Source: Ranitomeya imitator
Lineage: Eukaryota
Direction: 5' to 3'
Length of the DNA: 64,000 nucleotides
Assembly (NCBI RefSeq): GCF_032444005.1
Contig: NC_091287.1
Coordinates: 31,434,001 to 31,498,000 of the forward strand
In this document: positions 55,688 to 61,933 of the stretch, in pieces
Layout of the letters: each line of letters opens with the position of its first letter
How positions within the stretch are numbered: position 1 is the first letter of the stretch
The notes under the pieces: model-generated
Seen by the model: only the letters and a program-made list of their open reading frames with translations
The model's database searches: none
What the model was told of the DNA's origin: nothing
Program-made: the position numbers and the translations under genes

Positions 55688-56152
55688 CTGGAGATAGAAG
55701 CACAGTCCTTAATATAGAGTCACGTGCGGCCCATTACAATAGAGCGGTGTGCGGCCCATCACTATAGAGCGGTGTGCGGCCCATTACTATAGAGCGGTGT
55801 GCGGCCCATTACCATAGAGCACTGAGCGGCCCATTACCATAGAGCGGTGTGCGGCCCATTACTATAGAGCGGTGTGCGGCCCATTACTATAGAGCGGTGT
55901 GCGGCCCATTACCATAGAGCGCTGAGCGGCCCATTACCATAGAGCGGTGTGCGGCCCATTACTATAGAGCGCTGTGCGGCCCATTACCATAGAGCGCTGA
56001 GCGGCCCATTACTATAGAGCGCTGTGCGGCCCCTCAATATAGAGTGCTGTGTGGCCCATTATTATAGAGCGATGTGCGGCCCATCACTATAGAGTGCTGT
56101 GTGGCCCCTCACTATAGAGCGCTGTGCCCGCTGCGCCGAGTCCTGCACTCAC

Positions 56153-56288
56153 CCCGGTCCATGATCATGTCGTCCGTCATGGTGAACGTGTTGTGCAGGA
56201 TGTTCCTGAACGTGCTCCTGTCGATGCCGCCTCTGCTGTACGGATCTATCGGGCGTCCGACGATCGTGTTGTACAGACGGATGAGACT
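56153..56288 (-). pseudogene. 5'-truncated copy A of CLXN exon 2 (136 nt) inside satellite
   Basis: Matches 61778-61913 apart from the P/L codon variant; donor retained, native acceptor and first 20 nt lost. Confidence 0.92.
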
Positions 56289-57427
56289 ATAGAGCGATGT
56301 GCGGCCCATTACTATAGAGCGGTGTGCGGCCCATTACTATAGAGCGGTGTGCGGCCCATTACTATAGAGCGGTGTGCGGCCCATTACTATAGAGCGATGT
56401 GCGGCCCATTACTATAGAGCGGTGTGCGGCCCATCACTATAGAGCGGTGTGCGGCCCATCACTATAGAGCGGTGTGCGGCCCATTACTATAGAGCGATGT
56501 GCGGCCCATTTCTATAGAGCGGTGTGCGGCCCATTACTATAGAGCGGTGTGCGGCCCATTACTATAGAGCGGTGTGCGGCCCATTACCATAGAGCGGTGT
56601 GCGGCCCATTACTATAGAGCGGTGTGCGGCCCCTCACTATAGAGCGCTGTGCGGCCCCTCACTATAGAGCGGTGTGCGGCCCCTCACTATAGAGCGGTGT
56701 GCGGCCCATTACTATAGAGCGGTGTGCGGCCCATTACTATAGAGCGGTGTGAGGCCCATTACTATAGAGCGCTGTGCGGCCCATTACTATAGAGCGGTGT
56801 GCGGCCCATTACTATAGAGCGCTGTGCGGCCCATAACTATAGAGCGCTGTGCGGCCCCTCACTATAGAGCGGTGTGCGGCCCAATACTATAGAGTGCTGT
56901 GCGGCCCATTATTATAGAGCGGTGTGCGGCCCATCACTATAGAGCGCTGTGCGGCCCCTCACTATAGAGCGCTGTGCGGCCCCTCACTATAGAGCGCTGT
57001 GCGGCCCATTATTATAGAGCGGTGTGCGGCCCATCACTATAGAGCGCTGTGCGGCCCCTCACTATAGAGCGCTGTGCGGCCCATTACTATAGAGTGCTGT
57101 GCGGCCCATTATTATAGAGCGGTGTGCGGCCCATTACTATAGAGCGCTGTGCGGCCCATTACTATAGAGCGGTGTGCGGCCCATTATTATAGAGCGGTGT
57201 GCGGCCCATTATTATAGAGCGGTGTGCGGCCCATCACTATACAGCGCTGTGCGGCCCCTCACTATAGAGCGCTGTGCGGCCCCTCACTATAGAGCGCTGT
57301 GCGGCCCATTACTATAGAGCGGTGTGAGGCCCATTACTATAGAGCGGTGTGCGGCCCATCACTATAGAGCGCTGTGCGGCCCCTCACTATAGAGCGCTGT
57401 GCCCGCTGCGCCGAGTCCTGCACTCAC

Positions 57428-57563
57428 CCCGGTCCATGATCATGTCGTCCGTCATGGTGAACGTGTTGTGCAGGATGTTCCTGAACGTGCTCCTGTCGAT
57501 GCCGCCTCTGCTGTACAGATCTATCGGGCGTCCGACGATCGTGTTGTACAGACGGATGAGACT
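57428..57563 (-). pseudogene. 5'-truncated copy B of CLXN exon 2
   Basis: Same breakpoint as copy A; IDLY variant. Confidence 0.92.
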
Positions 57564-59002
57564 ATAGAGCGATGTGCGGCCCATTACTATAGAGCGGTGT
57601 GCGGCCCATTACTATAGAGCGGTGTGCGGCCCATTACTATAGAGCGGTGTGCGGCCCATTACCATAGAGCGGTGTGCGGCCCATTACTATAGAGCGGTGT
57701 GCGGCCCATTAGTATGGAGCGGTGTGCGGCCCATTACTATAGAGCGGTGTGTGGCCCATTACTATAGAGCGGTGTGTGGCCCATTACCATAGAGCGCTGT
57801 GCGGCCCATCACTATAGAGCGGTGTGCGGCCCATTACTATAGAGCGGTGTGCGGCCCATTACTATAGAGCGGTGTGCGGCCAATTACTATAGAGCGGTGT
57901 GCGGCCCCTCACTATAGAGCGGTGTGCGGCCCATCACTATAGAGCGGTGTGCGGCCCATCACTATAGAGCGGTGTGCGGCCCATCACTACAGAGCGCTGT
58001 GCGGCCCATCACTATAGAGCGGTGTGCGGCCCATCACTATAGAGCGGTGTGCGGCCCATTACTATAGAGCGGTGTGCGGCCCATCACTATAGAGCGGTGT
58101 GCGGCCCATTACTATAGAGCGGTGTGCGGCCCATCACTATAGAGCGGTGTGCGGCCCCTCACTATAGAGCGGTGTGCGGCCCCTCACTATAGAGCGGTGT
58201 GCGGCCCCTCACTATAGAGCGGTGTGAGGTCCATCACTATAGAGCGGTGTGAGGTCCATCACTATAGAGCGGTGTGCGGCCCATCACTATAGAGCGGTGT
58301 GTGGCCCATTACTATAGAGCGGTGTGCGGCCCATCACTATAGAGCGGTGTGCGGCCCATCACTATAGAGCGGTGTGCGGCCCCTCACTATAGAGCGGTGT
58401 GCGGCCCATTACTATAGAGCGGTGTGCGGCCCAATACTATAGAGTGCTGTGCGGCCCATTATTATAGAGCGGTGTGCGGCCCATCACTATAGAGCGCTGT
58501 GCGGCCCCTCACTATAGAGCGCTGTGCGGCCCCTCACTATAGAGCGCTGTGCGGCCCATTATTATAGAGCGGTGTGCGGCCCCTCACTATAGAGCGCTGT
58601 GCGGCCCATTACTATAGAGTGCTGTGCGGCCCATTATTATAGAGCGGTGTGCGGCCCATTACTATAGAGCGCTGTGCGGCCCATTACTATAGAGCGGTGT
58701 GCGGCCCATTATTATAGAGCGGTGTGCGTCCCATCACTATAGAGCGCTGTGCGGCCCCTCACTATAGAGCGCTGTGCGGCCCCTCACTATAGAGCGCTGT
58801 GCGGCCCATTATTATAGAGCGGTGTGCGGCCCATCACTATAGAGCGCTGTGCGGCCCCTCACTATAGAGCGCTGTGCGGCCCATTACTATAGAGCGGTGT
58901 GAGGCCCATTACTATAGAGCGGTGTGCGGCCCATCACTATAGAGCGCTGTGCGGCCCCTCACTATAGAGCGCTGTGCCCGCTGCGCCGAGTCCTGCACTC
59001 AC

Positions 59003-59527: not shown

Positions 59528-59663
59528 CCCGGTCCATGATCATGTCGTCCGTCATGGTGAACGTGTTGTGCAGGATGTTCCTGAACGTGCTCCTGTCGAT
59601 GCCGCCTCTGCTGTACAGATCTATCGGGCGTCCGACGATCGTGTTGTACAGACGGATGAGACT
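59528..59663 (-). pseudogene. 5'-truncated copy D of CLXN exon 2
   Basis: Same breakpoint; IDLY variant. Confidence 0.92.
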
Positions 59664-61252
59664 ATAGAGCGATGTGCGGCCCATTACTATAGAGCGGTGT
59701 GCGGCCCATTACTATAGAGCGGTGTGCGGCCCATTACTATAGAGCGGTGTGCGGCCCATTACCATAGAGCGGTGTGCGGCCCATTACTATAGAGCGGTGT
59801 GCGGCCCATTAGTATGGAGCGGTGTGCGGCCCATTACTATAGAGCGGTGTGTGGCCCATTACTATAGAGCGGTGTGTGGCCCATTACCATAGAGCGCTGT
59901 GCGGCCCATCACTATAGAGCGGTGTGCGGCCCATTACTATAGAGCGGTGTGCGGCCCATTACTATAGAGCGGTGTGCGGCCAATTACTATAGAGCGGTGT
60001 GCGGCCCCTCACTATAGAGCGGTGTGCGGCCCATCACTATAGAGCGGTGTGCGGCCCATCACTATAGAGCGGTGTGCGGCCCATCACTACAGAGCGCTGT
60101 GCGGCCCATCACTATAGAGCGGTGTGCGGCCCATCACTATAGAGCGGTGTGCGGCCCATTACTATAGAGCGGTGTGCGGCCCATCACTATAGAGCGGTGT
60201 GCGGCCCATTACTATAGAGCGGTGTGCGGCCCATCACTATAGAGCGGTGTGCGGCCCCTCACTATAGAGCGGTGTGCGGCCCCTCACTATAGAGCGGTGT
60301 GCGGCCCCTCACTATAGAGCGGTGTGAGGTCCATCACTATAGAGCGGTGTGAGGTCCATCACTATAGAGCGGTGTGCGGCCCATCACTATAGAGCGGTGT
60401 GTGGCCCATTACTATAGAGCGGTGTGCGGCCCATCACTATAGAGCGGTGTGCGGCCCATCACTATAGAGCGGTGTGCGGCCCCTCACTATAGAGCGGTGT
60501 GCGGCCCATTACTATAGAGCGGTGTGCGGCCCAATACTATAGAGTGCTGTGCGGCCCAATACTATAGAGCGGTGTGCGGCCCATCACTATAGAGCGGTGT
60601 GCGGCCCATCACTATAGAGCGGTGTGCGGCCCCTCACTATAGAGCCGTGTGTGGCCCCTCACTATAGAGCGCTGTGCGGCCCCTCACTATAGAGCGCTGT
60701 GCGGCCCATTATTATAGAGCGGTGTGCGGCCCATCACTATAGAGCGCTGTGCGGCCCCTCACTATAGAGCGCTGTGCGGCCCCTCACTATAGAGCGCTGT
60801 GCGGCCCATTATTATAGAGCGGTGTGCGGCCCCTCACTATAGAGCGCTGTGCGGCCCATTACTATAGAGTGCTGTGCGGCCCATTATTATAGAGCGGTGT
60901 GCGGCCCATTACTATAGAGCGCTGTGCGGCCCATTACTATAGAGCGGTGTGCGGCCCATTATTATAGAGCGGTGTGCGTCCCATCACTATAGAGCGCTGT
61001 GCGGCCCCTCACTATAGAGCGCTGTGCGGCCCCTCACTATAGAGCGCTGTGCGGCCCATTATTATAGAGCGGTGTGCGGCCCATCACTATAGAGCGCTGT
61101 GCGGCCCCTCACTATAGAGCGCTGTGCGGCCCATTACTATAGAGCGGTGTGAGGCCCATTACTATAGAGCGGTGTGCGGCCCATCACTATAGAGCGCTGT
61201 GCGGCCCCTCACTATAGAGCGCTGTGCCCGCTGCGCCGAGTCCTGCACTCAC

Positions 61253-61388
61253 CCCGGTCCATGATCATGTCGTCCGTCATGGTGAACGTGTTGTGCAGGA
61301 TGTTCCTGAACGTGCTCCTGTCGATGCCGCCTCTGCTGTACGGATCTATCGGGCGTCCGACGATCGTGTTGTACAGACGGATGAGACT
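61253..61388 (-). pseudogene. 5'-truncated copy E of CLXN exon 2
   Basis: Same breakpoint; IDPY variant. Confidence 0.92.
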
Positions 61389-61777
61389 ATAGAGCGATGT
61401 GCGGCCCATTACTATAGAGCGGTGTGCGGCCCATTACTATAGAGCGGTGTGCGGCCCATTACTATAGAGCGGTGTGCGGCCCATTACCATAGAGCGGTGT
61501 GCGGCCCATTATTATAGAGCGGTGTGCGGCCCCTCACTATAGAGCGGTGTGGGGCCCATCACTATTGAGTGCTGTGCGGCCCATTATTATAGGGCGGTGT
61601 GCGGCCCATTACTATAGAGCGCTGTGCGGCCCATTATTATAGAGCGGTGTGCGGCCCCTCACTATAGAGTGCTGTGCGGCCCATTATTATAGAGCGGTGT
61701 GCGGCCCATTACTATAGAGCGCTGTGAGGCCCCTCACTATAGAGCGCTGTGCCCGCTGCGCCGAATCCTGCACTCAC

Positions 61778-61933
61778 CCCGGTCCATGATCATGTCGTCC
61801 GTCATGGTGAACGTGTTGTGCAGGATGTTCCTGAACGTGCTCCTGTCGATGCCGCCTCTGCTGTACAGATCTATCGGGCGTCCGACGATCGTGTTGTACA
61901 GACGGATGAGACTTTCCACCTCCTGTCTGGTGA
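61778..61933 (-). CDS. CLXN: CLXN/EFCAB1 (calaxin) coding exon 2, full copy (TRQEVESLIRLY...RNILHNTFTMTDDMIMDR)
   Basis: 156 nt phase 1-1, acceptor ttcttgcag, donor G|gtgagt; FRNILH.TF.MTDDMIMDR is the calaxin motif. Confidence 0.92.

What the first reader, a model, noticed from the sequence alone, without database searches (positions are those of the whole stretch)
56128..61933. A calaxin exon has been captured and amplified by an intronic satellite
Seen: CLXN exon 2 (156 nt) is followed in intron 2 by five copies of its last 136 nt plus the donor and 25 nt of intron. All five share one breakpoint, where exon ...gagACT joins satellite ACTatagag (3-nt microhomology). The exon-bearing unit is 175 bp, exactly 7 x 25, so it stays in register with the monomer, and all inter-copy distances (1275, 1575, 525, 1725, 525) are multiples of 25. 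Inference: one microhomology-mediated capture made the exon piece a passenger monomer, which then spread by unequal crossover. This looks like satellite-driven exon duplication caught in progress.
Basis: partly seen in the sequence, partly recalled or inferred. Interest (0 to 1): 0.78.

Follow-up and report, generated by a model that had tools for sequence, protein, structure and literature searches.

The report
Calaxin exon tail copied inside intron repeat
In a frog's calaxin (cilia motor regulator) gene, the last 136 bases of exon 2 with its splice donor occur five extra times inside a 6-kb array of a 25-base repeat that fills the next intron; it is a very young, probably harmless by-product of repeat recombination.

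Summary
Calaxin exon 2 lies at 61778-61933 on the minus strand. Intron 2 is 25 unique bases, a 242-slot array of a 25-bp repeat in one unbroken register, and about 36 bases. Five 161-nt units sit in the array, each made of the 25 intron bases, the donor and the last 136 exon bases. All five share one joint, exon ...GAGACT to ATAGAG, and the same first repeat monomers, so the joint arose once.

The units differ at only two sites. They lie in nested blocks: 57403-59502 and 59503-61752 differ by one base and one 150-bp gap, and two 525-bp stretches are identical. This fits later block duplication by unequal exchange.

The copies are not exons. They lack the first 20 bases and a real acceptor, and using them would shift the frame into stops.

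Contigs from a related species run unbranched through the breakpoint at single-copy depth, so the amplification looks lineage-specific. Transcript contigs confirm the exon borders. They read G where this assembly's real exon and two copies read A (Pro to Leu), so the real exon probably takes part in the exchange.

Copy number was not checked with raw reads. The scan has noted similar amplified splice-signal arrays elsewhere in this genome (ofd1, ATP4A).

The parts
61778..61933 (-). Calaxin (CLXN/EFCAB1) exon 2, 156 nt, the functional copy. Its last 136 nt (61778-61913) are the sequence that was copied. It carries A at 61867 (Leu codon CTG).
   Evidence: calaxin residues 23-72, E 5e-9; contigs X7 and X17 match exactly 61778-61933; acceptor ttcttgcag| and donor GGG|GTGAGT.
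61753..61777 (-). First 25 nt of intron 2 (GTGAGTGCAGGATTCGGCGCAGCGG on the gene strand). This is the only unique sequence between the donor and the array, and it is copied with every unit. It is unrelated to the monomer.
   Evidence: no similarity to the monomer (1076 of 2000 shuffles score as high).
55724..61752 (.). Array of a 25-bp repeat (consensus GTGCGGCCCATTACTATAGAGCGGT). It has 242 slots in a single register with no indel. GC is 0.58 and CpG observed/expected is 0.93. It fills nearly all of intron 2.
61228..61388 (-). Copy unit 5 (25 nt of intron, the donor and the last 136 nt of exon 2). It has G at both variable sites (Pro codon) and is identical to the units at 56128 and 58978.
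59503..59663 (-). Copy unit 4, identical over all 161 nt to the real exon unit (A at both variable sites).
58978..59138 (-). Copy unit 3, G/G type.
57403..57563 (-). Copy unit 2, G at the intron site and A at the exon site.
56128..56288 (-). Copy unit 1, G/G type, nearest to exon 3. On its + strand left side lie 16 older-looking monomer variants (55724-56123).
57403..59502 (.). A 2100-bp block (unit 2, 56 monomers, unit 3, 14 monomers). It is the older twin of 59503-61752.
   Evidence: 1574/1575 identical plus one 150-bp gap, and 525/525 identical.
59503..61752 (.). A 2250-bp block, twin of the block above. Its 150 extra bases are six monomers that include two variants seen nowhere else in the array.
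55688..55723 (-). Last 36 nt of intron 2 before the exon 3 acceptor. It contains a decayed partial monomer (TTAATATAGAG).
   Evidence: 32 of 2000 shuffles score as high.
55583..55687 (-). Calaxin exon 3 (105 nt).
   Evidence: calaxin residues 73-107, E 2e-16 to 2e-12.
54939..55090 (-). Calaxin exon 4 (152 nt).
   Evidence: calaxin residues 108-157, E 5e-27.
49645..49749 (-). Calaxin exon 5 (105 nt).
   Evidence: calaxin residues 158-192, E 6e-14.

Best explanation
This is a real, very young structural variant of the calaxin gene.

Intron 2 was originally tiny, about 60 unique bases, and a 25-bp motif expanded inside it into a local minisatellite.

One illegitimate exchange then joined exon 2, after ...GAGACT, to a monomer at ACT|ATAGAG. 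In effect this was a head-to-tail duplication of [array + 25 nt of intron + donor + last 136 nt of exon]. It left a truncated exon tail with an intact donor inside the intron.

From then on the 161-nt units and the flanking monomers supplied long homology. Ordinary unequal sister-chromatid or homologue exchange duplicated whole blocks. The last step was a duplication of about 2.1 kb. The monomer stretches between units grew and shrank by whole monomers.

The real exon is the terminal member of this higher-order repeat and takes part in the exchange.

The copies do nothing useful. They are passenger decoy donors that the splicing machinery most likely ignores, because they have no acceptor partner.

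Shown: the anatomy, the single joint, the nested near-identical blocks, the intact collinear gene, and the exon borders in transcripts. Inferred: the mechanism and order of events, neutrality, and non-use of the decoy donors.
For: One joint and the same first monomers (a monomer ending GCGAT, then AAAH or AAAQ in the monomer map) follow all five copies.

The units differ at only 2 of 161 sites, giving three types: G/G three times, G/A once, and A/A twice including the real exon.

Block 57403-58977 against 59503-61227 is 1574/1575 identical with one 150-bp gap. Block 58978-59502 against 61228-61752 is 525/525 identical. The older segment 56128-57402 is about 97% identical to them, with gaps that are all multiples of 25.

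The whole array is in one register.

The 25-nt intron start is unrelated to the monomer, and the array edge at the exon 3 side is a decayed monomer. Both fit growth of the array in place.

Exons 2 to 5 are intact and collinear with solved calaxins.

In a related species (X4) one contig at depth 9.45 starts 30 nt inside the repeat. It runs through the 25 nt, the exon and the ACT breakpoint into intron 1 without a branch. So the repeat is older than the amplification.

Transcript contigs from organisms A and C, and the DNA contig from B, read G at 61867. The real exon here and two copies read A. So the A allele is derived and shared between the exon and the copies.
Against: No raw reads were available, so copy number rests on the assembly alone.

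The best-matching DNA run of the same species label (X1) shows contigs on the repeat but none on any exon unit. That is odd if that animal had six units, although the tool warns that holes prove nothing.

No independent data set was shown to contain the joint. An exact look-up of the ORF across the joint and a word search with it found nothing.

The shared A at 61867 is a CpG transition and could in principle have arisen twice.
Confidence: 0.75

Rival explanations
1. Partial assembly artefact. The joint and some copies are real, but the assembler went round the repeat loop once too often, or placed two alleles of one 2.1-kb block in tandem. The true number of copies would then be about three rather than five.
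For: The twin blocks differ by only one base and one 150-bp length change, which is also what two alleles of one block would look like. X1 shows no contig on the units. No raw reads could be laid.
Against: The array holds one register over 242 slots without a single indel, which argues for accurate reads. The whole array is only 6 kb with no gap nearby; the nearest N runs are at 50147-50329 and 51789-52014, so ordinary long reads would span it. Even without the last duplication, three distinct joint-bearing copies remain, each with different variants and different flanking monomer patterns.
Confidence: 0.15
2. The copies have a function. They might act as alternative or poison exons, or as an array of decoy donors that binds U1 and tunes calaxin splicing or expression.
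For: Each copy keeps the strong donor GGG|GTGAGT and 136 nt of exon context. The joint itself creates TATAG|T, a possible acceptor. In model substrates with two strong donors, splicing goes almost wholly to the one nearer the acceptor (PMC3413131), so five nearer donors could matter.
Against: Using the joint's AG gives a 134-nt piece that shifts the frame into a stop. Reading through the donor hits TAG in the first monomer. The acceptor has a poor pyrimidine tract (sequence). The copies are too young for any sign of selection, and a related species seems to do without them. The transcript contig X7 places nothing on the copy at 61228-61388, though that animal may lack the copies.
Confidence: 0.07
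3. The exon pieces entered the array several times independently, or through an RNA intermediate, rather than from one DNA joint.
For: None found.
Against: All five joints and their first 85 or more flanking bases are identical. The copies also carry intron sequence, which excludes a spliced RNA source.
Confidence: 0.01

Closest known systems
Higher-order repeats in tandem arrays that arise when a foreign piece inside a satellite or minisatellite is amplified along with its monomers by unequal crossover (general knowledge; satellite review PMC5615363, listed but not read)
   Same: A short monomer array in one register. A foreign insert defines a larger period. Nested blocks are nearly identical, and length changes come in whole monomers.
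   Different: Here the passenger is the tail of a working exon with its splice donor. The working exon itself is the last member of the higher-order repeat. The array is a small local intronic one.
Tandem exon duplication giving alternative or mutually exclusive exons (own knowledge: Letunic, Copley and Bork 2002)
   Same: Head-to-tail copies of exon sequence in the adjacent intron of the same gene.
   Different: The copies lack the 5' 20 nt and an acceptor, and their length (134-136 nt) does not keep the frame. They cannot serve as exons.
Tandem genomic duplication that multiplies splice signals, as in intron birth by segmental duplication (Hellsten et al. 2011, PMC3265369)
   Same: A single duplication across a coding or splice-signal border creates extra, identical splice signals in one step.
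   Different: There, the duplication of an AGGT-containing exon piece makes a new working intron. Here the duplicates fall inside an existing intron and add only surplus donors.
Other amplified splice-signal arrays noted by this scan in the same genome: ofd1 exon 1 donor junction about 227 times (s1-279632) and ATP4A mini-intron 59 times (s1-294728)
   Same: Same genome. Intronic tandem amplification carries intact copies of the gene's own splice signals. One of these is also a cilia gene.
   Different: In those cases the splice-signal piece is itself the repeat unit. Here a different 25-bp repeat carries a few exon-tail units as passengers. Neither note was checked here.
Microhomology-mediated tandem duplication (alternative end joining, or replication template switching of the FoSTeS/MMBIR type; own knowledge: Hastings et al. 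2009)
   Same: A single head-to-tail joint with a 3-nt overlap and no inserted bases.
   Different: The enzymology cannot be told from sequence. If the partner monomer was an ATT variant, the overlap would be 1 nt rather than 3 (one search lists such variants).

Membership tests
Calaxin (CLXN/EFCAB1) gene | Sequence similarity to solved calaxins over consecutive exons, in the same order | tested here: met
   Exons 2 to 5 match human and bovine calaxin residues 23-72, 73-107, 108-158 and 158-193, with E values from 5e-9 to 5e-27. Each exon was searched separately by reference. The joined model was not searched.
Calaxin (CLXN/EFCAB1) gene | EF-hand calcium-binding loops | tested here: met
   Loop patterns [26 protein letters not shown] and DYDHDSKLSYSDF lie in exons 3, 4 and 5.
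Minisatellite array with higher-order repeat | Head-to-tail monomers of 10-100 bp in one register | tested here: met
   241-242 units of 25 bp; 197 matches within 3 mismatches against 0 expected.
Minisatellite array with higher-order repeat | Larger blocks more alike than neighbouring monomers | tested here: met
   Blocks of 2.1-2.25 kb are 99.9-100% identical, while 38 monomer variants exist.
Minisatellite array with higher-order repeat | Copy number varies between individuals | not testable with these tools
   Only Logan contigs were available, no raw reads.
Genome-wide abundant satellite family | Many arrays and a very high copy number in the genome | tested here: inconclusive
   There is none elsewhere in the 64-kb window. 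In X4 the summed contig depth over repeat bins is 100-240 against 9.45 for the single-copy contig. By contrast, depth is in the millions for the transposon at 62240-62890. The tool warns that such depths are not copy numbers.
Functional tandem exon duplication | Complete exon with its own acceptor and donor | tested here: not met
   The copies start 20 nt into the exon at a repeat joint. Only the donor is kept.
Functional tandem exon duplication | Frame-preserving length | tested here: not met
   The 134-nt piece after TATAG| gives a stop after 14 codons (local script only).
Microhomology-mediated tandem duplication | Single head-to-tail joint with 1-5 nt of overlap and no filler | tested here: met
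   Exon ...GAGACT and monomer ...TTACT|ATAGAG give joint ...GAGACTATAGAG in all five copies.
Assembly expansion artefact | Spanning reads show fewer copies than the assembly | not testable with these tools
   No raw-read run was listed, and the single read-laying run used contigs only.

The most novel reading that the evidence does not exclude
The working exon 2 is a live member of the recombining array. Changes that arise in the decoy copies can be passed into the coding exon, and the reverse. The Pro-to-Leu allele shared by the real exon and two copies would be one such transfer. The five surplus donors, which lie nearer to exon 3 than the real donor, would measurably disturb calaxin splicing in carriers. 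Together with the ofd1 and ATP4A cases, this would mark the frog as a natural system in which intronic tandem amplification routinely multiplies splice signals of essential cilia and other genes.
Probability: 0.15. Interest if true: 0.6.

Novelty: new member of a known kind. Interest (0 to 1): 0.36.

Why it matters
This is an unusually clean record of how a tandem array builds a higher-order repeat. It shows one illegitimate joint, then block duplications so recent that 2 x 2.1 kb carry no new base change.

It also places five perfect copies of a strong splice donor, each with 136 nt of true exon context, between the real donor and its acceptor, in a gene needed for ciliary dynein function. 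In test substrates, the donor nearer the acceptor wins when both are strong (PMC3413131). Carriers are therefore a natural test of how cells ignore intronic decoys over kilobase distances.

The derived allele shared by the exon and two copies suggests that a coding exon can evolve in concert with its own junk copies.

None of this is unexpected in kind, and no function is indicated.

Tried and rejected
(1) Reads. The look-up of sequencing runs listed only Logan contigs. I laid X1, X4, X7 and X17 on 61100-62890. Including 62240-62890 was a mistake: it is a very abundant transposon, and it swamped the tables of joints and loose ends. Contigs cannot give copy number. X1 had nothing on the units.

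(2) Independent sighting of the joint. An exact look-up of the 65-aa ORF across the joint (61215-61409, minus strand) found nothing. A word-based protein search with it found no candidate.

(3) Is the 25-nt intron start, or the exon, a diverged monomer, so that the repeat grew out of the junction as in the ofd1 note? No similarity beyond chance.

(4) Is the register forced? Of 54 possible 3-nt overlaps between exon positions and monomer phases, 3 are in register. So it is about a 1-in-20 coincidence, or a hint that the first exchange happened between arrays paired in register.

(5) Earlier notes of the scan. A search by the word calaxin found nothing.

(6) Literature. No report of this locus or this repeat was found.

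Not done on purpose. Exons were searched one by one by reference, and joined frames were read only in a local script. The N runs were left alone.
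Full report
**What is there**

The region 55724-61752 is a tandem array of a 25-bp unit with consensus GTGCGGCCCATTACTATAGAGCGGT.
- TRF finds 241 copies.
- A pattern search finds 197 matches within three mismatches against none expected. All are on one strand, in one register, and nowhere else in the 64-kb window.
- Cutting the array into 25-nt slots gives 242 slots with 38 monomer variants and no frame slip from one end to the other.
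- Six places hold non-repeat sequence. A 29-nt seed from the end of the exon occurs at six positions. The units start on the + strand at 56128, 57403, 58978, 59503, 61228 and 61753, which are 1275, 1575, 525, 1725 and 525 bases apart.

**The gene**

The gene is on the minus strand.
- The stretch 61778-61933 translates to TRQEVESLIRLYNTIVGRPIDLYSRGGIDRSTFRNILHNTFTMTDDMIMDR. It matches solved calaxins (7rro, 8j07, 5x9a) at residues 23-72, with E about 5e-9.
- It has a good acceptor (ttcttgcag|) and a strong donor (GGG|GTGAGT).
- Two transcript-like contigs from public runs, X7 and X17, align to exactly 61778-61933, which confirms both borders.
- Downstream exons are at 55583-55687, 54939-55090 and 49645-49749. 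They match calaxin residues 73-107, 108-157 and 158-192 in order. The gene is therefore intact.
- I searched each exon separately by reference.

**Anatomy of intron 2**

Intron 2 consists of three parts.
- 25 unique bases after the donor. These are unrelated to the monomer.
- The array.
- A last 36 bases before the exon 3 acceptor. These contain a decayed partial monomer (p about 0.016).

Without the array the intron would be about 60 bases long, so the repeat most likely grew in place.

Each of the five extra units holds the 25 intron bases, the donor and the last 136 bases of exon 2. Each ends at the same joint...GATGAGACT|ATAGAGCGATGTGCGG, whereas the real exon goes on ...GAGACT|TTCCAC. Against the consensus monomer (...TTACT|ATAGAG) the overlap is ACT. 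If the partner was one of the ATT variants present in the array, the overlap would be a single T.

After the joint, all five copies have the same monomer ending GCGAT, followed by three consensus monomers. One joint with one shared flank means one founding event.

**Register**

The 161 foreign bases replace 11 bases of a monomer, a net gain of 150 = 6 x 25, so each unit occupies seven slots. That all five distances are multiples of 25 follows from this single fact and from the lack of indels. It is not five separate coincidences.

Of 54 possible 3-nt overlaps between exon positions and monomer phases, three are in register. The chance is therefore about 1 in 20. It may be luck. It may instead mean that the founding exchange took place between two arrays paired in register but offset by whole monomers, which would force a duplication length that is a multiple of 25. 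I cannot tell which.

**History read from the copies**

The six units differ at two sites only.
- Offset 12 (intron) is A in the real unit and in the 59503 copy, and G in the other four.
- Offset 114 (exon; 61867 in the real exon) is A in the real unit and in the 57403 and 59503 copies, and G in the other three.

The segments between unit starts show nesting.
- 57403-58977 against 59503-61227 is 1574/1575 identical with one 150-bp gap.
- 58978-59502 against 61228-61752 is 525/525 identical.
- 56128-57402 is about 97% identical to the long segments, with gaps that are all multiples of 25.

The last event was therefore a duplication of a block of about 2.1 kb holding two units. It is best explained by unequal exchange between the real unit on one chromatid and the 57403 unit on the other, with the crossover right of offset 12. 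This accounts for the one base difference without any new mutation. The only later change is the loss or gain of six monomers, two of which are variants seen nowhere else. Earlier rounds made the other units.

**Evidence from other animals (contigs only)**

X4 is a DNA run of a different species label, with 9 differences in 255 nt.
- One 1331-nt contig at depth 9.45 starts 30 nt inside the repeat. It runs through the 25 bases, the exon and the ACT breakpoint to 61977 without a branch.
- In a k=31 graph, joint-bearing copies would branch the path at ACT and raise the depth. That species therefore has the repeat at the same place but probably not the amplification.
- X4 reads G at 61867. Its two other exon differences are synonymous by my reading of the codons.

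X7 (same species label as the best DNA holder) and X17 (a third label) are transcript contigs, and both also read G at 61867.
- G (Pro, CCG) is therefore ancestral. The A (Leu, CTG) in this assembly's real exon is derived and is shared with two decoy copies.
- Either new copies were struck from the real exon after the change, or the change moved from a copy into the exon. In both cases the real exon takes part in the exchange.
- A repeated CpG transition is the less likely alternative.

X1, the best DNA holder, has contigs on the repeat but none on any unit. This is unexplained, and the tool warns that holes prove nothing.

**What the copies can do**

Nothing useful, as far as sequence shows.
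- They have no real acceptor.
- The joint creates TATAG|T, but behind a poor pyrimidine tract. The resulting 134-nt piece would shift the frame and stop after 14 codons.
- Reading through the donor meets TAG in the first monomer.
- X7 places nothing on the 61228 copy, but that animal may not carry the copies.

In model substrates with two strong donors, the donor nearer the acceptor is used almost exclusively (PMC3413131). Five nearer identical donors are therefore a real question for carriers. My inference is that exon definition protects the true donor, because the decoys lack an upstream acceptor.

**Artefact?**

No raw reads were on offer, so the copy number rests on the assembly.
- In favour of the assembly: a flawless register over 6 kb, no gap nearby, and an array short enough for any long read to span.
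- If the twin blocks were two alleles wrongly placed in tandem, three joint-bearing copies with different variants and flanks would still remain.
- I put about 15% on an inflated count and about 1% on no amplification at all.

**Context and novelty**

Earlier notes of this scan say the genome is a poison frog, most likely Ranitomeya imitator. They describe an ofd1 donor junction amplified about 227 times and an ATP4A mini-intron amplified 59 times. I did not test those notes. They suggest that intronic tandem amplification that drags splice signals along is common in this genome.

The present case is a compound form: a local 25-bp array with a few exon-tail passengers, and the working exon as its terminal member. 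In kind it is a higher-order repeat born from a microhomology tandem duplication, so it is a new member of a known kind. It is neat and datable, of moderate interest, with no sign of function.

Noticed in passing
window 61867 (and 61765): The real exon 2 in this assembly reads A at 61867 (Leu, CTG on the gene strand). Transcript contigs of two species labels and a DNA contig of a third read G there (Pro, CCG). This is a derived, possibly polymorphic amino-acid change in calaxin, shared with two of the decoy copies.
   Followed up: partly
window 55724-61752: The 6-kb array has CpG-island-like composition: GC 0.58, CpG observed/expected 0.93, and 466 CpG. The window as a whole has 0.47 and 0.60. 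This block sits inside the 5' part of the gene.
   Followed up: partly
window 55173-55490: Intron 3 of calaxin (about 490 nt) is mostly 3.7 copies of an 86-bp tandem repeat. On the gene strand its unit contains GTGAGTGCAG, a donor-like motif. Earlier scan notes mention 86-bp arrays at other genes.
   Followed up: no
window 50453-51357: Intron 4 holds 28 copies of a 32-bp pyrimidine-rich repeat (96% matches), between two N runs at 50147-50329 and 51789-52014. Earlier scan notes describe a 32-bp acceptor-like satellite elsewhere in this genome.
   Followed up: no
window 62240-62890: A very abundant interspersed repeat in intron 1. Summed contig depths are in the millions in both DNA runs, it is present in all four runs laid, and it shows many internal deletion variants.
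   Followed up: no
window 62893-64000: A tandem repeat with a 393-bp period, 2.8 copies, 91% matches, running off the window end in intron 1. Every calaxin intron seen in the window therefore carries a tandem array.
   Followed up: no
window 61220-61279 in run X4: The related species shows a short piece, about 61 nt at single-copy depth, on the repeat/25-nt border of the 61228 copy. It is separate from the long contig laid on the real exon. It may be an allele arm or a second border copy.
   Followed up: no
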